This document shows, one piece after another, positions 497 to 8,837 of a stretch of 64,000 nucleotides of DNA. The first letter of the stretch is position 1; the number at the start of each line of letters is the position of its first letter. The DNA is taken from positions 1 through 64,000 of IMG/VR virus record IMGVR_UViG_3300028558_000016. One strand, written 5' to 3'. The translations under genes and the position numbers were made by a program. The notes under the pieces were generated by a model. It saw only the letters and a list, made by a program, of their open reading frames with translations. It had not been told where the DNA came from and searched no databases.

Positions 497-1039
497 TTAA
501 TAATTTTTTAGCTTATGAATATCTTCAGGTCCGTTTAGCACAACCCAATCTCTGTCCTTAAACACAAAATGAATTGTAAGCTTTATGTCAGGCCTCTTCG
601 TCCACAGCTCAGTGAAATTCTCAATGTGTTCGATCATGTCATCAAAGAATTCTATCTCCTTAACGTCAGGATAATGCTCATCGATTATTCTTATCGCTCG
701 GTCAACCTTCTTTTTCCCGTCATACTTCAATGAATGGTGATGGAAATAAAGCTTGTTCTTCTCGAGTATTGGCATGATGTTTGGCTTTAGCCTATACATC
801 CTGTTTGTCAACACAACCTTTGCTGCAGTGTAATCCTCAGTTGCACGCATGTAATGAGGAAGTATACACTCCAACGGTTTAATGTTGAATTCAGGCATGA
901 GGCTTTCCCATCTACCCCACCAACCATTATGAGGATATGGAACACCTTTAATCCTCTCGTATTCCTTCTTCCCTTCATCGGGAAGAGGAACATCGAGAAG
1001 AGTGCCGTCCATGTCAAATATGTAAAGTTTTGTTATCAT
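497..1039 (-). CDS. HAD-family phosphatase, Swiss Army Knife RNA-repair-like HAD
   Basis: N-terminal FDMDGT motif, GWWG segment, C-terminal FFDD motif; adjacent to an RNA ligase. Confidence 0.75.
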   Translation of the reverse strand: MITKLYIFDMDGTLLDVPLPDEGKKEYERIKGVPYPHNGWWGRWESLMPEFNIKPLECILPHYMRATEDYTAAKVVLTNRMYRLKPNIMPILEKNKLYFHHHSLKYDGKKKVDRAIRIIDEHYPDVKEIEFFDDMIEHIENFTELWTKRPDIKLTIHFVFKDRDWVVLNGPEDIHKLKNY

Positions 1040-1065
1040 TTATTTCTATTTACTAATTTACTAAA

Positions 1066-2487
1066 TTAAACAATTACATTATAGCCTTTGATCAAATCGT
1101 TGTACAATTCTTTACCATCGAAATCCATCATGTATCTCTTAGAGCTTTTTGGACCTCCGATGAAATCAAAGAAGAACCCTTGGTGCTTCTTCAACTTTCT
1201 TTCTACAACAAATCTCATTACTTTTGCTGCCAACTTCTTTCTCAAGTTGGTCGCAGTTTCATCGCCTCTGTCGGAAGCACATTCTCTTATAGAAGATATT
1301 TCATCACGAGTGAATCCCAGCTTCTCAAAATCAACTGTGTCGATCTCAGCGATGTCTTTCACGTGAGTCAATCCAAGCTTAGCAAGAACATCTGCTCTCA
1401 AACCTCTCGATTCAAAAGTGATTGCATCCTTGTGCTTTCTGTATTCAATGAACTCCTCGTAAGTGGAAATTTCAGAAGTCAACTTGTCAATTTCTTTTAA
1501 AGTTCTCTTCCATCCTTCTTGCAAGTGTTCAATCTCTTCTCCTCTTCCTGGGAAAGTCGCCTTGTATTCGTTCACGTTGTCCTCACCAGATCTAACGATG
1601 TCGATCAATCTCCAGAACGCAGTTGAGTCCTTGAAGAAGTGGATTGCACAGTAAGCTGGATTCTTCATTTTTACACGAGGGTATCCAAACTCAGTATGCT
1701 TTCCATAATCACAAACAACATAACCTTCCTCACGGTAAGTCATGCCATCGAAAGACTCTTTCAATTTATCTGGAGAAGAATTCAATGCAAGAGTTGGAGC
1801 CATTGGCACACCAAGATCTTTTGATATAATCTCAAGATCAACGAAAGAAACTTCTTCCAAAGTATCAAGCTTTCTTGCACCCAACAAATAGACAGCACTG
1901 TCTTGGTGTGGTGTAACAACAATGTTGTACTTAGTACAAAGCTCAAACGCCAAAGTATATCCATCATATTTCTTAAACAAAGCTTTTACCCACTCAGTTC
2001 TAAGATCACAATGTTCCATCATTCTCACATCGTCATCTTCTCTCTTAACAGTCTCCATGAAAGCGTGAACGAACAAATCCGAGAATGTTCCTCCAAGCTT
2101 AGTATAGTGAAAGTTATCCACATCACCTTCTCCGTTAGCAGTTCCAGTTGTTCCGAAGCAAACTTCTCCTGTAACGTAATCAGTGTAAACGTGAATCATT
2201 GTTCCATCCATCTTTTTGAAGATCCTTGCAGACTCCCAGTTTATAGGTGCTGCGTGTCCTTCTCCAAGGTTGAAGAATTTTCTGAATGCAATGGACATAA
2301 CTCTCCAAGTATCTTTCTCAACTACAAGTCCTCTCGCATCTCTAACTTCCTCGTTAGTGAAGTTGGATTCGATAGAATCGTACTTAAGCAATACCTTGTG
2401 AGGATAGTCCTTGTGCTTCAATTTGAAGTCAGCAAGAGTCTTCTCAAGACCGTGCTCTTTTAGGTATTTTGTTATTGCGAGTTCCAT
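1066..2487 (-). CDS. rnl1: T4 Rnl1-like RNA ligase with C-terminal extension
   Basis: EVRDARGLVVE, AFRKFFNLGE, motif I KMDGT, AFEL, EEGYVV, RVKMK. Confidence 0.85.
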   Translation of the reverse strand: MELAITKYLKEHGLEKTLADFKLKHKDYPHKVLLKYDSIESNFTNEEVRDARGLVVEKDTWRVMSIAFRKFFNLGEGHAAPINWESARIFKKMDGTMIHVYTDYVTGEVCFGTTGTANGEGDVDNFHYTKLGGTFSDLFVHAFMETVKREDDDVRMMEHCDLRTEWVKALFKKYDGYTLAFELCTKYNIVVTPHQDSAVYLLGARKLDTLEEVSFVDLEIISKDLGVPMAPTLALNSSPDKLKESFDGMTYREEGYVVCDYGKHTEFGYPRVKMKNPAYCAIHFFKDSTAFWRLIDIVRSGEDNVNEYKATFPGRGEEIEHLQEGWKRTLKEIDKLTSEISTYEEFIEYRKHKDAITFESRGLRADVLAKLGLTHVKDIAEIDTVDFEKLGFTRDEISSIRECASDRGDETATNLRKKLAAKVMRFVVERKLKKHQGFFFDFIGGPKSSKRYMMDFDGKELYNDLIKGYNVIV

Positions 2488-2498
2488 TTCAAATATGA

Positions 2499-3023
2499 TT
2501 AGTAATGTTTACTTTTTCTTTTCTTTTTTCTACAAACAAGGTCAGCAGCGCAAGAAGCCGCGTAGGCATCTGGCTTTGATCTTACCCTGTATCCGGCAGC
2601 TCTTATGAATCCCATTCCAGAATCGTAAGCAATGTTGCTTTTCCATCTTGGATTTGGATTCAAGTCAAGGTCGATGTCAACAAGCTTCTCCATTGGAGAA
2701 ATTCTTGCATAAACCCCTTCAAGCTCCTTTTCAAGGTATTCGCCAACAGCGAAAGCTCGTTCAACTTCGCCCCAAAGCTTTGAATACATGTCCTTAGCTC
2801 TTGGAACGTTGTCAATACTGAAAATGTAGTGGGCACCTGCACCAACGTGGTATACAAGAACAACCGTTGCATAACGTGTCTTGTTTTTTTGATGCTCGGA
2901 GTCACATCCAACATAGATGCGGATTCCGTTTGGTGATGTGGACATGTGAGTCTTGATGTATTCCCTCATGTAGATACCGAGGTCATCAATGAATGCACCG
3001 CCAAATTTTTTAAAGTTTTTCAT
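2499..3023 (-). CDS. RNase H-like YkuK/DUF458 family protein
   Basis: IYVGCDS, GAGAHYIF, KLWGEV, DIDLDLN and KPDAYAASCAAD motifs. Confidence 0.8.
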   Translation of the reverse strand: MKNFKKFGGAFIDDLGIYMREYIKTHMSTSPNGIRIYVGCDSEHQKNKTRYATVVLVYHVGAGAHYIFSIDNVPRAKDMYSKLWGEVERAFAVGEYLEKELEGVYARISPMEKLVDIDLDLNPNPRWKSNIAYDSGMGFIRAAGYRVRSKPDAYAASCAADLVCRKKKRKSKHY

Positions 3024-3139
3024 TTTCGTTTCTCCTTTCTCTGTGTGTTTGTTTTAACAGCATAAAAGAGAGAAACACACGTCTCAAAATTATACCGGTT
3101 TTTATCGGTTTGTTTCTGAGAACGCGTTTGGAAACTAAT

Positions 3140-3337
3140 CTAATTCATTTCGAACCATCTTCGTTTAAACATTATTCTCAGCCTCGCGTAAGTACGAAGT
3201 CGCGACCATTTAAAATAGACGCTTTTTGTAGTCCTATTTGACCCTCGCGGGGAAACATGACCACATCTTTTTATTAGAATGTGTTCTGCACATTTTAAAT
3301 CTTCAAACTCCTTCATATTACAATCTTTAAAGTCCAT
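3140..3337 (-). CDS. Hypothetical protein
   Basis: 65 aa ORF co-oriented with neighbours; no motif recognised. Confidence 0.45.
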   Translation of the reverse strand: MDFKDCNMKEFEDLKCAEHILIKRCGHVSPRGSNRTTKSVYFKWSRLRTYARLRIMFKRRWFEMN

Positions 3338-3355
3338 TTAATATTATATATCATT

Positions 3356-3646
3356 TTAAAATAATCCATTCTCGAGTATGTCAACGTGTTTCTTCAAAAC
3401 ATCTCCGTGACAACTTGACGGTTTGCACCAACATCCTAAAGTTTTTCCTTTTAATTCTCCCAATCGATCCATCAGGTCTTTATTGTTCAAAAGGTATTCC
3501 TCGTATTTTTCAATTGCTTCCTTTCTCGAGGAAACCTTAAACTCAGCAAGAGTTCCCTCTTTATGAGAATAAGGATTTCCCCAAATGGAAGGACGTCCAA
3601 TATAGACGTCGTACTTATCTTTCTTACAGTGGACAACTTTACACAT
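3356..3646 (-). CDS. DUF4326 domain protein
   Basis: VVHCKK..DVYIGRPSIWGNPY...LKGKTLGCWCKP..CHGDVL. Confidence 0.85.
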   Translation of the reverse strand: MCKVVHCKKDKYDVYIGRPSIWGNPYSHKEGTLAEFKVSSRKEAIEKYEEYLLNNKDLMDRLGELKGKTLGCWCKPSSCHGDVLKKHVDILENGLF

Positions 3647-3657
3647 TAATTAATTTC

Positions 3658-4347
3658 TTATGCGTGCAGCTGTCTAATGTTTCCCTTGTACAACTCCTTG
3701 ATGGTTATTTTTCTTCCTGTTACGTGATCAAGAACAAAACCATCCTGTTCTCTGTAAGTTCTTCTCTTGTCGTTTCTGTTTCCATAACCGATTTGATTGA
3801 ACCTCGTCTCTTTCACCTTGGCACCTATCGCACCATCATTAATGTCCTTGAGCCTTTCTTCAAGTCGTGCCCAAGCAGTCTCTTCATTTTTTTCTCTGGT
3901 CCTGTGCTCTTCAACTCTCACTATCATTCCAGTTGGAATATGAGTCAACACGCAAACAGTTTCTACCTTGTTTCGGTTTTGACCGCCGTTACCAGATCCA
4001 CGAGTGTACTTTCGATGCACGTCGTTTCTATTTAAGACAAATTTTGGTTGGGAGTTTTCTTCCATTACAGCTACCGTCACGGTGCTGGTCTGTACTCTTC
4101 CTCTCTTTTCAGTTGGAGGAACTCTTTGCCATCTATGTCCGCCTGATTCGTTCTCAAAGAACTTCCTGACTCCGTTTCCAGTCAGTCATAGCGAGACATA
4201 ACCTGGCATTCAGTGTTCTACTGCAGAAGCAAATTGATTGATGCTTGCGGCCTTTTGATAAATGTCCGCCATTTCATTGACGAGGAGCTTTGCATCTTCT
4301 CCTCCTTCTGCTGCTCGAATTTCGAGCTTGATCTTTTCTGTTTTCAT
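3658..4347 (-). CDS. Short class I peptide chain release factor (RF1/PrfH-like, 229 aa) with two in-frame TGA codons (4210-4212, 4186-4188)
   Basis: Manual translation from ATG 4347: [22 protein letters not shown]...[52 protein letters not shown]...TRGSGNGGQNRNKVET. The RF motifs EIRAxxGG, ESGGHRxQRVP (PxT) and GGQ lie in one frame; the track ORF 3658..4080 is only the 3' part. Confidence 0.85.
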
Positions 4348-4427
4348 TTTTTATTCGGGTTTATATTTAAAAATTAAGTACACTCGCCTTTCAACCGAGA
4401 TTAAGGAATACGGAATTTCTTCCATGC

Positions 4428-5015
4428 CTACTTAAGTTTCTTTTTCTTTGTCAATTCTATTAATTTCTCTCTTGCCAATTGTTGTTCAACATAATCAGCG
4501 ATAATTACTATAGTTGAATCGCTTATCCACATGTGGCTTCTTCCGTTCACAGTAAGAGAAAAATCTCCATCACTTGGATCAAGAACAACCTCTGTTATCT
4601 TCTTGATTGGATTGTGCTTCTCTTTATCTTTCGCATCTCGTTCTAACGAGAATTTTGCCATTATGTCGCTGTTCCATTTCTTTGCATTTTTCTTGCTTTC
4701 TCCGGTGTAATTGAAATACTCAACATATTCTTTCAAAGGATTTCCTCCGTTTGCATTATTCAAACCACCTTTTAAAGTGTTTGCGTCTTCCATAATGACG
4801 TTTAAGTTTGTCCAGTCCTTCACCTTCTTCCAATTCTTATTCACATACACCTTCGCACATTCAGCAACTATTTGCATTGCTGCAATGTGTTGTCTATATT
4901 CGTTGTAGAAATTAGATGTCACAGAAAATTTTGAAGATTGCACTGTCTTTTCGTTTTCCTTGTCAGTCATCGAAACCGGGCGCATCATCATTCCATATAT
5001 CTCATTCTTTTTCAT
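4428..5015 (-). CDS. Hypothetical protein
   Basis: 195 aa ORF with phage-like codon composition. Confidence 0.7.
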   Translation of the reverse strand: MKKNEIYGMMMRPVSMTDKENEKTVQSSKFSVTSNFYNEYRQHIAAMQIVAECAKVYVNKNWKKVKDWTNLNVIMEDANTLKGGLNNANGGNPLKEYVEYFNYTGESKKNAKKWNSDIMAKFSLERDAKDKEKHNPIKKITEVVLDPSDGDFSLTVNGRSHMWISDSTIVIIADYVEQQLAREKLIELTKKKKLK

Positions 5016-5547: not shown

Positions 5548-5548
5548 G

Positions 5549-5634
5549 TGCAGTAGGTGAGATTCGAACTCACAACCCCCTGATTGGAAGTCAGGTGCTC
5601 TATGCTTTCGCGTCCAATTAGGAGCTACTACTGC
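5549..5634 (-). tRNA. Atypical tRNA with TCC (Gly) anticodon, enlarged D-loop, Lys/Arg-like body
   Basis: GCAGTAG/CTACTGC acceptor with A73, 21-nt D-loop containing GC-GAAA-GC, anticodon arm CCTGA-CTTCCAA-TCAGG. Confidence 0.8.
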
Positions 5635-5660
5635 AAGTGCGAACTTTCCATCGCATTAAT

Positions 5661-5720
5661 TGGAGCAACCTCAGTTAACTGATTCGCATTTCTGCGAGGG
5701 GGGAGTTAACCTCTGGTTGC
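5661..5720 (-). ncRNA. CCA-ended hairpin RNA (element A)
   Basis: GCAACC..GTTAAC..TCGCA-GAAA-TGCGA..GTTAAC..GGTTGC-T-CCA. Confidence 0.6.
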
Positions 5721-5725
5721 GTAAT

Positions 5726-5773
5726 TGGAGCCGAGGGGCCGTTCTCCAACGGTGAGTTCCCTTTCAACTCGGC
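5726..5773 (-). ncRNA. CCA-ended hairpin RNA (element B)
   Basis: GCCGAG..GGG..CCGTT-GGAG-AACGG-CCC-CTCGGC-T-CCA. Confidence 0.6.
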
Positions 5774-5778
5774 ATGTG

Positions 5779-5869
5779 CGGGGAAGATTGGAATCGAACC
5801 AATTAGTTTGATTTGCAGAAGACATTCTTTTTAAACAGAATGGTGCTCAGCCACCCGAGCATCTTCCCC
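5779..5869 (-). tRNA. Aberrant tRNA (Cys GCA-like remnant) with inserted hairpin; possible pseudo-tRNA
   Basis: GGGGAAG/CTTCCCC acceptor, GCTC/GAGC D-stem, ATTGG-TTCGATT-CCAAT T-arm. The central region has a CATTCT/AGAATG hairpin followed by CT-GCA-AA-TCAAA-CTA. Confidence 0.6.
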
Positions 5870-5874
5870 TTTTA

Positions 5875-6057
5875 TTATTTTCTCTTTCTCTCTTCGTCTA
5901 AATATCTATCATGTTCGTCTTTTGAATAGATCTCATAGTAACCACATTTTACTTTGTAATAAAATGGTGACATGTATTTCCATTCCTTGTTAACATCAAT
6001 GAATTTAGATTTTTCTAAAATCTGATTTTCCTCATCCGTCGGTTTGATTGTAATCAT
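5875..6057 (-). CDS. Hypothetical protein
   Basis: Track ORF 5875..6120; the in-frame ATG at 6057 (MITIKPT...) is the likelier start. Confidence 0.5.
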   Translation of the reverse strand: MITIKPTDEENQILEKSKFIDVNKEWKYMSPFYYKVKCGYYEIYSKDEHDRYLDEERKRK

Positions 6058-6195
6058 CGTTTTGTTTTTAGTTATTAAATAGGATGGGAAAACTTTAAGC
6101 GATAGTCTTTCGACAGGCAAGTTATTTTTTCATCGATGATTGATCAAGTCACCTCAAAATAAAATACTTTTCTACACTTCAGCACTTTCCCTCTG

Positions 6196-6268
6196 AGCGG
6201 AAAACGGGGCTCGAACCCGCGACCTTAACCTTGGCAAGGTTACGCTCTACCAACTGAGCTATTTCCGC
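6196..6268 (-). tRNA. tRNA-Gly(GCC)
   Basis: GCGGAAA acceptor, U73, TAACC-TTGCCAA-GGTTA; canonical cloverleaf. Confidence 0.95.
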
Positions 6269-6269
6269 A

Positions 6270-6400
6270 TGGTGCAGTGTAATTAAAAGGGTTGGACTTA
6301 TCTTCCATTCGTCAATGGCTCTTACCAACTTTCGATGTCACGATTAATTTTAAGCGCAAAACGATTCTATTGTCGAATTTTCTATTTGCGCCGACACTGC
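6270..6400 (-). ncRNA. 131-nt multi-stem RNA with 7-bp acceptor-like stem and ACCA end (element C)
   Basis: GCAGTGT/ACACTGC-A-CCA closing; internal stems GCGCAAA/TTTGCGC, AATTAA/TTAATT, GTTGG/CCAAC, CCATT-GACG-AATGG. Confidence 0.6.
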
Positions 6401-6407
6401 ATTTTTG

Positions 6408-6480
6408 AGCGGGAGACGAGGTTCGAACTCGCGACCTATAGCTTGGAAGGCTATCGCTCTACCAACTGAGCTACTCCCGC
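6408..6480 (-). tRNA. tRNA-Gly(TCC)
   Basis: GCGGGAG acceptor, U73, ATAGC-CTTCCAA-GCTAT; canonical. Confidence 0.95.
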
Positions 6481-6518
6481 GTGCGGACATTGTTTCGGGT
6501 ACAACGTCCAAAACCTAA

Positions 6519-6592
6519 TGGGGCCAGGATCGAACTCGCGTCCGACGAATGGAAGCTAATGAGGCCATCCAAACCGCTCATTATCGCCTGGC
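6519..6592 (-). ncRNA. 74-nt CCA-ended tRNA-like RNA lacking canonical arms (element E)
   Basis: GCCAGG/CCTGGC-C-CCA closing, TAATGAG/CTCATTA hairpin, GAGTTCGATC T-loop-like motif without a T-stem. Confidence 0.55.
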
Positions 6593-6748: not shown

Positions 6749-6973
6749 TCATTTCATGAAAAGATGTTTAATTCTTTCCATATCTACTTCAATAGTTTTA
6801 ATGTTCAACTTCTCTCCAGTCTTTTTAAAATGATCATACCAAAGTCTAACCTTTTCAGATTTTATTATCTGACCATTATAATTTTTCCTTTTCAACCATT
6901 CCTTTCCAAAATATAAAATTCGTTTTTCTGTTATTCTCGAATTCATTATATGTTTAAAAACTTTTTCAATCAT
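6749..6973 (-). CDS. Hypothetical protein within the tRNA array
   Basis: 74 aa ORF fitting exactly between two tRNAs. Confidence 0.55.
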   Translation of the reverse strand: MIEKVFKHIMNSRITEKRILYFGKEWLKRKNYNGQIIKSEKVRLWYDHFKKTGEKLNIKTIEVDMERIKHLFMK

Positions 6974-6974
6974 G

Positions 6975-7059
6975 TAGCGCTGGTGAGACTCGAACTCACA
7001 CTACCGTTAAGGAACCCGCTTATGAGGCGGGCACAATTACCACATCTGTTCACAGCGCT
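6975..7059 (-). tRNA. tRNA with CAT anticodon on a class II (long variable arm) scaffold
   Basis: AGCGCTG/CAGCGCT, A73, CCCGC-CTCATAA-GCGGG, 15-nt variable region, GTGAG-TTCGAGT-CTCAC. Confidence 0.85.
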
Positions 7060-7101: not shown

Positions 7102-7371
7102 TCATTTGGTGGGGCTGTCGGAAACAGCAGACTTTACTTTATTTTCTTTCTTATACGTCTTCAAGAATTCCAAAGCATTTTGCAATTCTTCGACCCTGTT
7201 CTTGTTAGAAGGAATGCTTCCATTTGCCTGTCTAACAGTCATCGGATCCGATGACGATAAATTCTTTTCAAAGAACTCTAAATTTCTTTCTTCCATTAAG
7301 AGTCTTTCTCTTAATAATTTTGCCACGTATGGCATCGGATCATATTGTCCTCTTTCTTCTTGTGTCTTCAT
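7102..7371 (-). CDS. Hypothetical protein within the tRNA array
   Basis: 89 aa ORF starting 2 nt after the CCA of the upstream tRNA. Confidence 0.6.
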   Translation of the reverse strand: MKTQEERGQYDPMPYVAKLLRERLLMEERNLEFFEKNLSSSDPMTVRQANGSIPSNKNRVEELQNALEFLKTYKKENKVKSAVSDSPTK

Positions 7372-7372
7372 T

Positions 7373-7464
7373 TGGTGCGCCCGGAGGGATTCGAACCCCC
7401 GTTGGTGTTATTCACACGTCTGATTAAAAGTCAGGACCATTCGGCCAGCTATGGGAACGGACGC
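7373..7464 (-). tRNA. tRNA with TTT (Lys) anticodon and long variable arm
   Basis: GCGTCCG/CGGGCGC-A-CCA, CTGA-CTTTTAA-TCAG, V-arm GTGT-GAATA-ACAC, GGGGG-TTCGAAT-CCCTC. Confidence 0.85.
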
Positions 7465-7478
7465 ATTTGTTTTTATTG

Positions 7479-7552
7479 TGCGCCCGGTTGGGTTCGAACC
7501 AACGACCCCCTGATTAAAAGTCAGGTGCATCTACCAGCTGAGCTACGAGCGC
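7479..7552 (-). tRNA. tRNA-Lys(TTT)
   Basis: GCGCTCG/CGGGCGC, CCTGA-CTTTTAA-TCAGG; canonical. Confidence 0.95.
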
Positions 7553-7774: not shown

Positions 7775-7880
7775 TGGCAAAGATTGGATTCGAACCAATG
7801 ACCTCTCGTTTACTTTCCTTAACAATGTTTCCATTGACGGGGATTTCAGGCGAGCGCTCTACCAACTGAGCTACTTATCC
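7775..7880 (-). tRNA. tRNA-Phe(GAA) with a 33-nt insertion after position 37 (intron-like)
   Basis: Standard D- and T-arms. Anticodon arm CTCG-C-CT-GAA-A-[33 nt including CAATG-GAAA-CATTG]-A-A-CGAG; the acceptor stem has two mismatches. Confidence 0.7.
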
Positions 7881-7981: not shown

Positions 7982-7984
7982 AAT

Positions 7985-8119
7985 TTACAAATATTCGTTC
8001 TTGTTACACTCAAAAAACAAAACCCACAACTCGTGAATTCTCTCATTCACTTCATCATTTCCATTTTGTCTCTTGTTTAACAAAGACATCAATTCGTTTA
8101 CTATGTCATCCTTTTTCAT
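7985..8119 (-). CDS. 44-aa hypothetical protein between Thr tRNAs
   Basis: Manual translation MKKDDIVNELMSLLNKRQNGNDEVNERIHELWVLFFECNKNEYL*. Confidence 0.45.
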   Translation of the reverse strand: MKKDDIVNELMSLLNKRQNGNDEVNERIHELWVLFFECNKNEYL

Positions 8120-8122
8120 TTG

Positions 8123-8195: not shown

Positions 8196-8317
8196 AATGT
8201 CTCCGATCGTAAAAATAATCTCTCAAATATTATCAAGATCATTTCCATTCTTTATTAAGCGGTCGGACACGCTACTACTAAATCCAAAAGTTGCAACTTC
8301 TGAATTTTTCATCTTTG

Positions 8318-8413
8318 AAGCGGGAGTGAGATTCGAACTCACGTTCTCTTTCGAGTTGAGGCTTATGAGGCCCTGCTGGCGTTTTGCAACTTCCATCTCC
8401 AGTCGATCCCGCA
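8318..8413 (-). tRNA. Initiator-like tRNA(CAT) with expanded D-loop and a V-arm
   Basis: T1:T72 mismatch plus GCGGGA/TCCCGC, D-stem CTGG/CCAG with long loop, GGGC-CTCATAA-GCCT, V-arm CTC-GAAA-GAG. Confidence 0.75.
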
Positions 8414-8419
8414 ATGTGT

Positions 8420-8541
8420 GCCGCTTCCTGGACCCTATCACCAGGATTTTCTTTGGACTACAGAAGAGAGATTCGCCAATTTTTTTCCATAGAATTAAAC
8501 CATATACGGCGCTTTTCTACACTCTCAACTTTCGCAAGCGG
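8420..8541 (-). ncRNA. Candidate structured RNA (element F)
   Basis: Closing CCGCT/AGCGG; internal GAGAG/CTCTC, CGCCG/TGGCG and TCCTGG/CCAGGA stems. Confidence 0.4.
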
Positions 8542-8552
8542 ACTTTTATTTG

Positions 8553-8782: not shown

Positions 8783-8814
8783 CAAAAAAAATCCCAAACG
8801 TTTGGTTTGGGATT
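8783..8814 (-). terminator. Intrinsic terminator of the leader (attenuator)
   Basis: AATCCCAAAC-CAAAC-GTTTGGGATT 10-bp stem running into a U8 tract (the first two U also close the stem). Confidence 0.9.
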
Positions 8815-8837
8815 CGTAATTTCGTTATTAGTTAACG

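What the first reader, a model, noticed from the sequence alone, without database searches (positions are those of the whole stretch)
6270..6400. 131-nt multi-stem RNA with a perfect 7-bp acceptor stem and ACCA end
Seen: GCAGTGT/ACACTGC-A-CCA closes at least four more stems (GCGCAAA/TTTGCGC, AATTAA/TTAATT stacked on the acceptor, GTTGG/CCAAC, CCATT-GACG-AATGG). It fills the whole gap between the two Gly tRNAs. It has no TTCRA loop and no G3:U70 pair, so it is neither a tRNA nor a tmRNA. Candidate new tRNA-like ncRNA class.
Basis: partly seen in the sequence, partly recalled or inferred. Interest (0 to 1): 0.72.

Follow-up and report, generated by a model that had tools for sequence, protein, structure and literature searches.

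The report
Orphan tRNA-derived RNA with tRNA end
Between two glycine tRNA genes of a 482-kb soil phage lies a 131-base sequence that folds stably, ends like a tRNA (7-bp stem plus ACCA) and seems pieced together from tRNA fragments; no other genome has it, so it is a curiosity, not a proven new RNA class.

Summary
A perfect 7-bp stem plus A-CCA closes three robust hairpins and fills the gap between tRNA-Gly(UCC) and tRNA-Gly(GCC). That layout arose in 76 of 2,000,000 shuffles, and the fold has z = -3.7. The AAUUAA/UUAAUU helix is only about 10% populated in the model.

It is not a tRNA, a tmRNA or any Rfam family. It has no paralog in its genome and no homolog in two related phages with the same tRNA cluster, nor in the viral, metagenome or prokaryote collections. 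Covariation therefore cannot be tested, and no RNA data cover it.

Parts look tRNA-derived. Hairpin 1 copies the acceptor stem of the phage's tRNA-Asn. Positions 70-100 resemble the D-loop and anticodon arm of its tRNA-Val (p about 0.004).

Best reading: a tRNA-derived chimeric RNA, co-transcribed with the tRNA array and probably excised by RNase P. It is the same kind of thing as phage T4 RNAC/RNAD but not homologous to them. A young, functionless rearrangement scar is a strong rival.

Novelty: new variant of a known kind. Interest is modest.

The parts
6270..6400 (-). Whole 131-nt element (position 1 = 6400, position 131 = 6270)
   Evidence: Sequence. MFE -34 kcal/mol, z -3.71. The fold persists in the Gly-element-Gly precursor context. 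Contigs of two other DNA runs are identical.
6394..6400 (-). 5' strand of the closing, acceptor-like stem: GCAGUGU (positions 1-7)
   Evidence: Perfect Watson-Crick pairing with 6274-6280; pair probability 0.85-1.00. The first 5 bp and A73 are the same as in the odd tRNA(UCC) at 5548-5634.
6274..6280 (-). 3' strand of the closing stem: ACACUGC (positions 121-127)
6270..6273 (-). Discriminator-like A128 plus genome-encoded CCA (129-131)
   Evidence: Sequence. Only 4 of 55 ARAGORN tRNAs of this genome encode CCA.
6353..6392 (-). Hairpin 1 (positions 9-48): 8-bp stem GGCGCAAA/UUUGCGCU with an inner 4-bp stem and a 7-nt loop. The stem and the following UAG are identical to the acceptor stem and U8-A9-G10 of the phage's tRNA-Asn(GUU).
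   Evidence: Pair probabilities 0.85-1.0. Exact 10-mer match to positions 1-10 of tRNA-Asn at genome 386777, and the 3' strand also matches. The tRNA model aligns it as a bare acceptor stem, 4.2 bits.
6344..6349 (-). AAUUAA (positions 52-57), 5' strand of the optional helix P2
   Evidence: Complementary to 6281-6286, but pair probability is only about 0.10. Forcing it costs 3.7 kcal/mol relative to the MFE.
6281..6286 (-). UUAAUU (positions 115-120), 3' strand of the optional helix P2, contiguous with the acceptor 3' strand
6332..6343 (-). Hairpin 2 (positions 58-69): UCG/CGA with a 6-nt loop
   Evidence: Pair probability 0.77-0.90.
6291..6329 (-). Hairpin 3 (positions 72-110): GUUGG/CCAAC, internal loop, CCAUU/AAUGG, loop GACG
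   Evidence: Pair probability 0.89-0.93.
6301..6331 (-). Segment (positions 70-100) resembling a tRNA D-loop (AGUUGGUA) followed by the anticodon arm of the phage's tRNA-Val(GAC)
   Evidence: Local alignment score 29. It is reached by 8 of 2000 dinucleotide shuffles and 5 of 1500 real genomic 131-mers, each scored as the best over 55 tRNAs. AGUUGGUA is shared with at least 10 tRNAs at positions 14-21.
6401..6407 (-). 7-nt leader CAAAAAU between tRNA-Gly(UCC) and G1; U at -1
   Evidence: Sequence.
6269..6269 (-). Single U between the CCA and G1 of tRNA-Gly(GCC)
   Evidence: Sequence.
6408..6480 (-). Upstream neighbour: tRNA-Gly(UCC)
   Evidence: ARAGORN; Rfam 74.1 bits.
6196..6268 (-). Downstream neighbour: tRNA-Gly(GCC)
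   Evidence: ARAGORN; Rfam 72 bits.

Best explanation
The element is a tRNA-derived but non-tRNA small RNA gene embedded in the tRNA operon of a 482-kb T4-like phage from a rhizosphere metagenome.

Shown:
- It lies on the tRNA strand and exactly fills the gap between two tRNA-Gly genes.
- It folds into a closed three-hairpin structure. Its ends form a perfect 7-bp acceptor-type stem followed by A-CCA.
- It is not a tRNA or tmRNA.
- Parts of it copy the acceptor stem of the phage's tRNA-Asn and resemble the D-loop and anticodon arm of its tRNA-Val.

Inferred:
- It is co-transcribed with the array.
- RNase P cuts between U-1 and G+1. The determinants that remain are the G1-C72 pair, the 7-bp stem and the RCCA end, which can pair with the P15 loop. 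That end should matter more here because the T loop is missing.
- RNase P cleavage at the 5' end of tRNA-Gly(GCC) leaves ...ACCA-U. A 3' exonuclease then trims it to ACCA.
- The product would be a 131-nt RNA that presents a tRNA-like 3' end on a non-tRNA body.

Most speculative: its role. I favour an acceptor-end mimic, meaning a substrate or decoy for enzymes or defence toxins that act on tRNA 3' ends. This fits the adjacent RNA-repair and ribosome-rescue genes. It may also be only a stable by-product, like T4 RNAC/RNAD, whose roles are still unknown.
For: - Strand, position and pairings.
- Fold z = -3.71 against -1.26 on the other strand. Helix probabilities 0.85 or more. The fold is kept in the precursor context.
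- The gap-filling closure plus NCCA arose in 76 of 2,000,000 shuffles.
- Encoded CCA is rare among this genome's tRNAs, 4 of 55. It recurs in non-canonical tRNA-like RNAs of the lineage.
- The phage has its own CCA-adding-type nucleotidyltransferase.
- A second gap-filling RNA of about 130 nt (8416-8543) has an acceptor-like stem. It is conserved in a related phage with 3 compensatory pairs, and there it ends in A-CCA. Such RNAs are therefore maintained in this lineage.
- tRNA-derived pieces.
- Neighbouring genes: Rnl1-type RNA ligase, HAD RNA-repair domain, RF-1 domain protein.
- RNase P determinants (U-1, G+1/C+72, RCCA, the 12-bp measure) and its non-tRNA substrates: PMC11143913.
- T4 RNAC/RNAD are made from the T4 tRNA region and have unknown roles: PMC3014915 and PMC9697503.
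Against: - No homolog exists anywhere, so there is no covariation. The two closest available relatives have the same cluster without the element. One has an unstructured AT-rich 129-nt gap (MFE -11.9). The other has no gap at all and no tRNA-Gly(GCC).
- There is no expression evidence. RNA runs share only tRNA-Gly words.
- There is no T loop, which is a major RNase P and CCA-enzyme determinant.
- U-1 can pair with A128, which could shift or weaken cleavage.
- The P2 helix, which would mimic the acceptor/T-stem stack, is weak.
- Sigma-70-like hexamers sit inside the element, so part of it could be a promoter.
Confidence: 0.5

Rival explanations
1. It is a young, functionless scar of rearrangements among tRNA genes. 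Fragments of several tRNA genes (Asn-like acceptor, Val-like D and anticodon region, an acceptor like that of the odd tRNA(UCC)) were joined by illegitimate recombination in a fast-changing array. The stems exist because tRNA fragments are self-complementary. Any RNA made is turned over.
For: - The pieces match the phage's own tRNAs.
- The locus is absent from both related clusters, and this stretch of the array differs in all three phages.
- Only identical copies are seen, in samples holding the same phage population.
- tRNA gene fragments are common in prokaryotic genomes (PMC9897764).
Against: - Tandem decayed tRNAs do not explain why the two far ends are perfectly complementary and followed by ACCA directly next to the following tRNA (3.8e-5 per gap).
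- The interior has lost all tRNA-model signal while every helix is still perfect. That pattern is not simple decay.
- A comparable neighbour RNA is conserved with compensatory changes.
Confidence: 0.3
2. It is a cis-acting spacer: a structured insulator or processing aid for the flanking tRNAs, or a spacer carrying an internal promoter for tRNA-Gly(GCC). It would not be an RNA with a role of its own.
For: - Several other inter-tRNA gaps of this genome are also strongly structured, for example 7982-8121 (z -5.4) and 392386-392511 (z -3.2).
- Hexamers TCGACA-18-TAAAAT lie on the minus strand at 6376-6347.
Against: - Promoter-like sites in the region are not more frequent than in shuffles: 16 against 11.1 +/- 3.2.
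- A spacer needs neither a 7-bp closure nor an encoded ACCA, and no other structured gap has that combination.
- Relatives do without it.
Confidence: 0.1
3. It is a chargeable tRNA-like RNA of a new class. An aminoacyl-tRNA synthetase would load the ACCA end, and the RNA would act in translation, peptide transfer or signalling.
For: It has a perfect 7-bp stem, the A73 position and an encoded CCA. It shares G1-C72, C2-G71, A3-U70, G4-C69, U5-A68 and A73 with the conserved odd tRNA(UCC) 640 nt downstream, so the two could share an enzyme.
Against: - It has no T arm, no anticodon-type 7-nt loop in context and no G3:U70.
- It has no homologs, so it is not a class.
- Sharing 5 bp with one of about 60 acceptor stems has a chance of about 0.06.
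Confidence: 0.05
4. It is a chance arrangement of complementary words in an intergenic spacer.
For: Genome-wide, 7-bp stems (one G-U allowed) followed by NCCA at spans of 60-260 nt are common: 1156 in both strands. They are not enriched near tRNAs.
Against: The specific layout is rare: perfect stem, at both gap edges, with ACCA (76 of 2,000,000 shuffles). No shuffle of 200 folds as well.
Confidence: 0.02

Closest known systems
Phage T4 RNAC and RNAD (species 1 and 2 RNAs; rnaC, rnaD)
   Same: Small non-tRNA RNAs of similar size (139 and 119 nt) encoded on the tRNA strand inside the tRNA cluster of a T4-type phage. They are made in infection, and their roles are still unknown (PMC3014915 and PMC9697503). 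RNAC also ends in an acceptor-like stem.
   Different: There is no sequence or structure homology: model R1 finds nothing on them. RNAC keeps a canonical T arm, CCGGG-UUCGAAU-CCCGG, next to its 3' strand, and neither T4 RNA has an encoded CCA. The present element has no T arm and has an encoded ACCA.
Element B of the same cluster (window 8416-8543, minus strand; L030 3841-3970)
   Same: An RNA of about 130 nt that fills the gap between two tRNA genes and is closed by an acceptor-like stem. In the related phage it ends GCGUCUU...AAGACGC-A-CCA. No tRNA model recognises it.
   Different: B has a T-arm-like hairpin (5 bp, 9-nt loop) next to the 3' strand. It is conserved between two phages with 3 compensatory pairs. 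The element under study has neither that hairpin nor any homolog, and the two share no detectable sequence similarity (the weak 7.9-bit hit).
Canonical and expanded tRNAs (Rfam RF00005)
   Same: It has a 7-bp acceptor stem, a discriminator and CCA, and lies in a tRNA array. It holds a D-loop word, AGUUGGUA, and an acceptor stem copied from tRNA-Asn.
   Different: It has no cloverleaf, T arm or anticodon loop. Rfam gives no hit, and the phage's own tRNA model gives 4.2 bits.
Non-tRNA substrates of bacterial RNase P (pre-4.5S RNA, tmRNA precursor, hairpin model substrates with a 3' RCCA)
   Same: A helix closed by the 5' and 3' ends with G+1/C+72, U at -1 and a 3' RCCA. These are the determinants reviewed in PMC11143913.
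   Different: This is a functional analogy only. There are no matches to the SRP, tmRNA or other Rfam families, and cleavage has not been tested.
tmRNA tRNA-like domain
   Same: An acceptor stem with CCA on a larger, non-decoding RNA.
   Different: It has no T arm, no G3:U70 and no tag reading frame. ARAGORN and the Rfam tmRNA models find nothing.

Membership tests
tRNA (RF00005) | Cloverleaf scored by the covariance model at or above the gathering score of 29 bits | tested here: not met
   No hit at gathering scores, at E<=10 in 4 kb, or at E<=10 on 147 nt alone. The model built from the phage's own tRNAs gives 4.2 bits. ARAGORN finds nothing.
tRNA (RF00005) | T arm: a 5-bp stem with a UUCRANY loop directly 5' of the acceptor 3' strand | tested here: not met
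   The 17 nt before ACACUGC (GUCCAACCCUUUUAAUU) cannot form a hairpin. The only UUCGA lies inside hairpin 1.
tRNA (RF00005) | 7-bp acceptor stem, discriminator base and 3' CCA | tested here: met
   GCAGUGU/ACACUGC, then A, then CCA.
tmRNA | tRNA-like domain with a T arm and G3:U70, plus a tag-peptide reading frame | tested here: not met
   ARAGORN's tmRNA search finds nothing. The Rfam tmRNA families find nothing. Pair 3:70 is A-U.
T4 RNAC/RNAD-type phage tRNA-cluster RNAs | Non-tRNA RNA gene inside a phage tRNA cluster, on the tRNA strand | tested here: met
   It lies between tRNA-Gly(UCC) and tRNA-Gly(GCC) in a T4-like phage that has a gp20-type portal, a gp44-type clamp loader and Rnl1.
T4 RNAC/RNAD-type phage tRNA-cluster RNAs | Sequence or structure homology to T4 rnaC or rnaD | tested here: not met
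   Model R1 searched over the T4 locus L002 gives only a 6.4-bit hit, and that is on tRNA-Thr. The folds differ.
T4 RNAC/RNAD-type phage tRNA-cluster RNAs | Accumulates as a discrete, stable RNA in infected cells | not testable with these tools
   No RNA run holds the element. The RNA runs found share only tRNA-Gly words. The runs that were laid are DNA contigs.
Bacterial RNase P substrates | Sequence determinants: N-1 = U, a G+1/C+72 pair, and a 3' RCCA able to pair with the P15 loop | tested here: met
   U6401, the G6400-C6274 pair, and A-CCA at 6273-6270. Determinants as reviewed in PMC11143913.
Bacterial RNase P substrates | Acceptor/T-stem coaxial stack of about 12 bp, with a T loop contacting the S-domain | tested here: inconclusive
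   AAUUAA/UUAAUU could extend the stem to 13 bp on the 3' strand, but its pair probability is about 0.10. There is no T loop.
Bacterial RNase P substrates | Actual cleavage at -1/+1 | not testable with these tools
   This needs an in vitro or in vivo assay.
A conserved structured ncRNA family of any kind | Homologs with covarying base pairs | tested here: not met
   - No paralog.
- No homolog in L030 or L034-L037, or in five portal relatives.
- Nothing in the viral, metagenome or genome collections.
- Only identical copies in other runs.

The most novel reading that the evidence does not exclude
The element would be a working tRNA-end mimic. The phage would build a non-tRNA scaffold from tRNA-gene fragments and encode the CCA end in the genome, perhaps because such a scaffold is a poor substrate for CCA addition (an inference from its missing T arm, not tested). 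The ACCA end would then be charged, or would act as a decoy for host defence enzymes that attack or modify tRNA 3' ends. Together with element B and the other CCA-encoding odd tRNA-like RNAs of this lineage, it would define a fast-evolving class of phage acceptor-end decoys that sequence homology cannot detect.
Probability: 0.1. Interest if true: 0.75.

Novelty: new variant of a known kind. Interest (0 to 1): 0.37.

Why it matters
Phage tRNA arrays are now read largely as counter-measures to host enzymes that deplete or cut tRNAs. The non-tRNA RNAs that sit in these arrays have had no assigned role since T4 RNAC and RNAD were described decades ago.

This locus would show how such RNAs can arise: by rewiring tRNA-gene fragments while keeping, or creating, a perfect acceptor end. 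If the RNA is made and processed as predicted, it would give a small, testable case of RNase P acting on a substrate without a T loop. It would also be a candidate tRNA-end mimic sitting next to RNA-repair genes.

If it is only a rearrangement scar, it still records how quickly these arrays change. It also warns against calling a new class from a single well-folded locus.

Tried and rejected
- **Near and distant BLAST against 50,697 phage records.** Only the flanking tRNA-Gly genes match.
- **Acceptor-plus-ACCA pattern over IMG/VR.** It gave 27 loci, all at chance-level similarity to the element.
- **Relatives through the Rnl1 ligase, in IMG/VR and JGI metagenomes.** Only the source contig and one 28.8-kb relative came back. 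That relative's Gly-Gly gap is unrelated.
- **Relatives through the 81-aa (63-aa) neighbouring ORF.** Four short contigs of a third phage have no element and no tRNA-Gly(GCC).
- **Patterns from conserved neighbouring RNAs.** They found the same relative only.
- **Portal-protein relatives.** Model R1 found nothing in five records, but these are fragments and the model rests on a single sequence, so this is weak evidence of absence.
- **Stem-only patterns in the viral and prokaryote collections.** Either 0 hits, or 3 hits that R1 scores as noise.
- **Public reads.** Two DNA runs hold an identical copy. A run with a 5-10% diverged relative has no contig over the element, which proves nothing at a depth of 2-3. 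RNA runs share only tRNA-Gly words.
- **Coding reading.** No ORF of 50 aa or more covers the element except a spurious one that overlaps tRNA-Gly. The ATG at 6402 gives 6 codons.
- **Another genetic code.** ORFs of 120 aa or more cover 85% of the genome under the standard code, and no region collapses. There is no evidence of recoding, so none was used.
- **Anticodon-loop words.** The 8-mers CUUUUAAU and CUUAAAAU equal the anticodon loops of tRNA-Lys(UUU) and tRNA-Leu(UAA). About 6 shared 8-mers are expected by chance in this AT-rich sequence, so I do not read them as anticodon-loop decoys.
- **The 10-mer shared with tRNA-Asn.** It is not significant as a match 'anywhere': 51 of 200 shuffles reach length 10. 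Its weight comes from sitting exactly at the tRNA's 5' end and forming the same stem followed by UAG. My estimate is 65/4^7 x 1/64 x 2 stems, about 1e-4.
- **A 92-nt closed RNA at genome 374873-374964.** It ends in ACCA but could equally be a 27-codon ORF behind a GGAGG site, and it is not in a tRNA gap, so I left it out of the class.

Full report
**What is there**

The window is the first 64 kb of a 482,156-bp virus record from a rhizosphere metagenome. It is a T4-like phage: it has a gp20-type portal, a gp44-type clamp loader, an Rnl1-type RNA ligase, thymidylate synthase and DNA ligase. All long ORFs of the window except two, and all 11 tRNAs ARAGORN finds in the window, lie on the minus strand.

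On that strand the order is as follows:
- tRNA-Gly(UCC), 6480-6408
- a 7-nt leader CAAAAAU
- the element, from G1 = 6400 to A131 = 6270
- a single U (6269)
- tRNA-Gly(GCC), 6268-6196

The closing stem is GCAGUGU(1-7)/ACACUGC(121-127), followed by A128 and CCA(129-131). The other pairings are GGCGCAAA/UUUGCGCU (9-16/41-48), AAUUAA/UUAAUU (52-57/115-120), GUUGG/CCAAC (72-76/106-110) and CCAUU-GACG-AAUGG (83-96). A 3-bp hairpin at 58-69 also forms.

The minus strand folds to -34 kcal/mol, with z = -3.71 and none of 200 shuffles as good. The plus strand gives z = -1.26. In the partition function every helix has pair probabilities of 0.85 or more, except AAUUAA/UUAAUU at about 0.10. Forcing that helix costs 3.7 kcal/mol. 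So the helix 'stacked on the acceptor' is possible but not supported by the model. The fold is unchanged when the two flanking tRNAs are included.

Stems of 7 bp followed by NCCA are common genome-wide and are not enriched near tRNAs. The specific layout is rare, though. A perfect stem at the 5' edge of the gap together with NCCA at its 3' edge arose in 76 of 2,000,000 shuffles of the gap. That stays small after allowing for the few dozen inter-tRNA gaps of the genome.

**It is not a known RNA**

ARAGORN calls no tRNA or tmRNA there. Rfam 15 gives nothing at gathering scores, nothing at E<=10 in a 4-kb search and nothing at E<=10 on the 147 nt alone.

I built a covariance model from 28 canonical tRNAs of this phage. 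It gives the element 4.2 bits. On the same strand it scores the canonical tRNAs at 70-83 bits and the odd tRNAs nearby at 19-63 bits. There is no T arm next to the acceptor 3' strand, no anticodon-type loop and no G3:U70. The pentamer UUCGA does occur, but buried in hairpin 1.

**It is an orphan**

BLAST and a single-sequence covariance model (R1) find only the element itself in the 482-kb genome.

The nearest relative in IMG/VR and JGI has an Rnl1 that is 71% identical and a syntenic tRNA cluster. Between its two tRNA-Gly genes it has an unstructured, AT-rich 129-nt gap that aligns to the element no better than shuffles do.

I reached a third relative through a neighbouring small ORF that is 84% identical. 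It goes from tRNA-Gly(UCC) straight into that ORF, with no tRNA-Gly(GCC) and no element.

R1 finds nothing in these loci, in T4, or in five records of more distant portal relatives. Pattern scans of the viral, metagenome and prokaryote collections gave only chance hits or none.

Two other DNA runs contain contigs identical over the element. A run with a 5-10% diverged relative has no contig across it. No RNA run holds it. So neither covariation nor expression can be assessed with public data.

**Its parts look tRNA-derived**

- The stem of hairpin 1 and the three bases after it (GCGCAAA-UAG ... UUUGCGC) are identical to the acceptor stem and U8-A9-G10 of the phage's own tRNA-Asn(GUU) at genome 386777. 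I estimate that a given 7-bp stem equals one of about 65 acceptor stems and is followed by UAG with a chance of about 1e-4.
- Positions 70-100 align with the D-loop (AGUUGGUA) and anticodon arm of the phage's tRNA-Val(GAC). The score is reached by 8 of 2000 dinucleotide shuffles and by 5 of 1500 real genomic 131-mers, each taken as the best over all 55 tRNAs.
- The outer stem shares its first five pairs and A73 with a conserved odd tRNA(UCC) 640 nt downstream. The chance of that is about 0.06.

The element therefore looks like a chimera of tRNA-gene pieces whose old pairings have been rewired. One example is the D-loop GUUGG, which now pairs with CCAAC.

**Context**

The genome holds 55 ARAGORN tRNAs and 63 Rfam tRNA matches (61 at or above the 29-bit gathering score) in about eight clusters. 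Many are expanded versions of normally short tRNAs.

Only 4 of the 55 encode CCA, and most have N73 followed by CA. The phage carries its own CCA-adding-type nucleotidyltransferase. Encoded CCA recurs instead in non-canonical members of the lineage.

Another gap-filling RNA of about 130 nt lies at 8416-8543 (minus strand) and has an acceptor-like stem and a T-like hairpin. It is conserved in the relative with three compensatory pairs, and there it ends A-CCA. So closed, tRNA-end-bearing RNAs are maintained in this lineage, even though this particular one is not shared.

Downstream of the array lie an RF-1-domain protein, an RNase H-like protein, Rnl1 and a HAD domain of RNA-repair proteins. 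I read this as a tRNA-supply and repair island.

**Most likely mechanism**

Shown: the position, the strand, the structure and the end sequences.

Inferred:
- The element is co-transcribed with the array.
- RNase P cuts at U-1/G+1, using the G1-C72 pair, the 7-bp stem and the RCCA end that pairs with the P15 loop. These determinants, and non-tRNA substrates such as pre-4.5S RNA, are reviewed in PMC11143913.
- RNase P cleavage at the 5' end of tRNA-Gly(GCC) leaves one extra U, which exonucleases remove.

An encoded CCA makes sense for an RNA without the T-loop elbow, because both RNase P and CCA-adding enzymes use that elbow.

The function is not shown. I favour an acceptor-end mimic or decoy, or a stable by-product. 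The closest precedent is T4 RNAC/RNAD: small RNAs from the T4 tRNA region whose roles remain unknown (PMC3014915 and PMC9697503). They are analogous in kind but not homologous. RNAC keeps a T arm, and neither T4 RNA encodes CCA.

**Rivals**

- A young, neutral rearrangement scar explains the tRNA-derived pieces and the absence from relatives. It does not explain the perfect outer closure with ACCA.
- A cis-acting spacer or promoter is possible. Sigma-70-like hexamers lie at 6376-6347, but such sites are no more frequent in the region than in shuffles. A spacer would need neither a closure nor a CCA.
- A chargeable new tRNA-like class is not excluded, but nothing beyond the acceptor end supports it.
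- Chance is very unlikely.

**Verdict**

The feature is real, non-random and well folded. It is correctly judged not to be a tRNA or tmRNA. But it is a single orphan locus built from tRNA debris, with no conservation or expression evidence. It is best filed as a new structural variant of the known kind 'non-tRNA small RNAs embedded in phage tRNA arrays'. Interest is moderate to low for the locus itself. It is higher for the lineage's collection of odd tRNA-like RNAs.

Noticed in passing
window 8416-8543 (minus strand); L030 3841-3970: 'Element B' is a second RNA of about 130 nt. It fills the gap between tRNA-Met and an odd tRNA-Met-like gene (about 8316-8412). It has an acceptor-like closing stem and a T-arm-like hairpin (5 bp, 9-nt loop). 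It is conserved in the related phage with 3 compensatory pairs, and there it ends A-CCA. No tRNA or Rfam model recognises it.
   Followed up: partly
window 6519-6592 (minus strand); L030 6582-6658; L036 about 458-535: A 74-nt tRNA-sized RNA of the form GCCAGG...GAGUUCGAUCCUGGC-C-CCA, conserved at about 79% in two related phages. It has a 6-7-bp closing stem and an encoded CCA, but ARAGORN and Rfam do not call it a tRNA (8.2 bits with the phage's own tRNA model).
   Followed up: partly
window 5548-5634 (minus strand); L030 7140-7228; L036 1049-1138: An odd tRNA with anticodon UCC and a 21-nt D loop. It is 92% identical between phages and carries an encoded ACCA in the two relatives, but CAU in the window. 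Its acceptor, GCAGUAG/CUACUGC-A, shares 5 bp and A73 with the element under study. It is a third Gly-anticodon gene beside the two canonical ones, and it has A73 instead of U73.
   Followed up: partly
window 5778-5869 (minus strand): ARAGORN calls this 92-nt tRNA Asn(GUU), but it folds with a 9-bp acceptor stem, a 6-bp D stem with a 4-nt loop, and a 6-bp anticodon stem with an 8-nt loop GUUUAAAA. That is tRNA-Sec- or allo-tRNA-like (weak Rfam tRNA-Sec hit, 23.5 bits). The anticodon may be UUA rather than GUU, so the Asn call is doubtful.
   Followed up: partly
window 7775-7880, 7373-7464 and 6974-7059 (minus strand); genome 387316-387430, 417828-417973, 414375-414464, 124757-124843: Many tRNA-model hits are 84-146 nt long: expanded versions of normally 73-76-nt tRNAs. 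They often sit beside a canonical copy with the same anticodon. For example, Lys-UUU of 92 nt with an encoded ACCA lies next to the 75-nt copy at 7478-7552. One is a 106-nt tRNA with an insertion of about 33 nt in the anticodon region.
   Followed up: partly
genome 358020-358092 (-), 368276-368349 (+), 374278-374351 (+): The genome has three tRNAs with anticodon CUA (amber-reading). Even so, ORFs of 120 aa or more cover 85% of the genome under the standard code, and no region collapses. There is no evidence that TAG, or any other stop codon, is reassigned.
   Followed up: yes
whole genome (55 ARAGORN tRNAs); genome 307388-307756 (+): About 40 of the 55 tRNA genes have the discriminator followed by CA (CAA, CAT or CAG) rather than CCA, and only 4 encode CCA. 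The phage encodes its own PolyA_pol/CCA-adding-type nucleotidyltransferase (394-aa ORF, 116 bits).
   Followed up: partly
window 497-5015 (minus strand): An RNA-repair and ribosome-rescue module lies just downstream of the tRNA array. It holds an RF-1-domain protein (3658-4080), DUF4326 (3356-3646), an RNase H-like protein (2499-3023), an Rnl1-type RNA ligase (1066-2487) and a weak match (23.4 bits, just under Pfam's 25.6-bit cut-off) to a HAD domain of 'Swiss Army Knife' RNA-repair proteins (497-1039).
   Followed up: partly
window 5640-5775 (minus strand); L030 7050-7135: A structured stretch between two tRNA-like genes contains the stem GCAACC...GGUUGC with an inner GUUAAC/GUUAAC pairing (MFE -42.5). 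It is partly conserved in the related phage. No Rfam match.
   Followed up: no
L030 6664-6767; L036 538-644: The two related phages share a conserved structured segment of about 100 nt (GCAGUGCCACGG...GGGUGU...ACACCC) just upstream of tRNA-Gly(UCC). The window genome lacks it and has only a 38-nt hairpin-containing spacer there (6481-6518).
   Followed up: no
window 5875-6063, 6749-6973, 7102-7371 and 7990-8120 (minus strand): Small ORFs (44-89 aa) are interspersed among the tRNA genes. The 5875-6063 ORF probably starts at the ATG near 6063 (63 aa), as in its 84%-identical homolog, and not at the upstream TTG. None has a Pfam match among those tested.
   Followed up: partly
window 8789-8815 (minus strand): A strong terminator-like hairpin (11 bp followed by a U run) lies about 165 nt upstream of the first tRNA of the array. 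It probably ends the preceding transcription unit.
   Followed up: no
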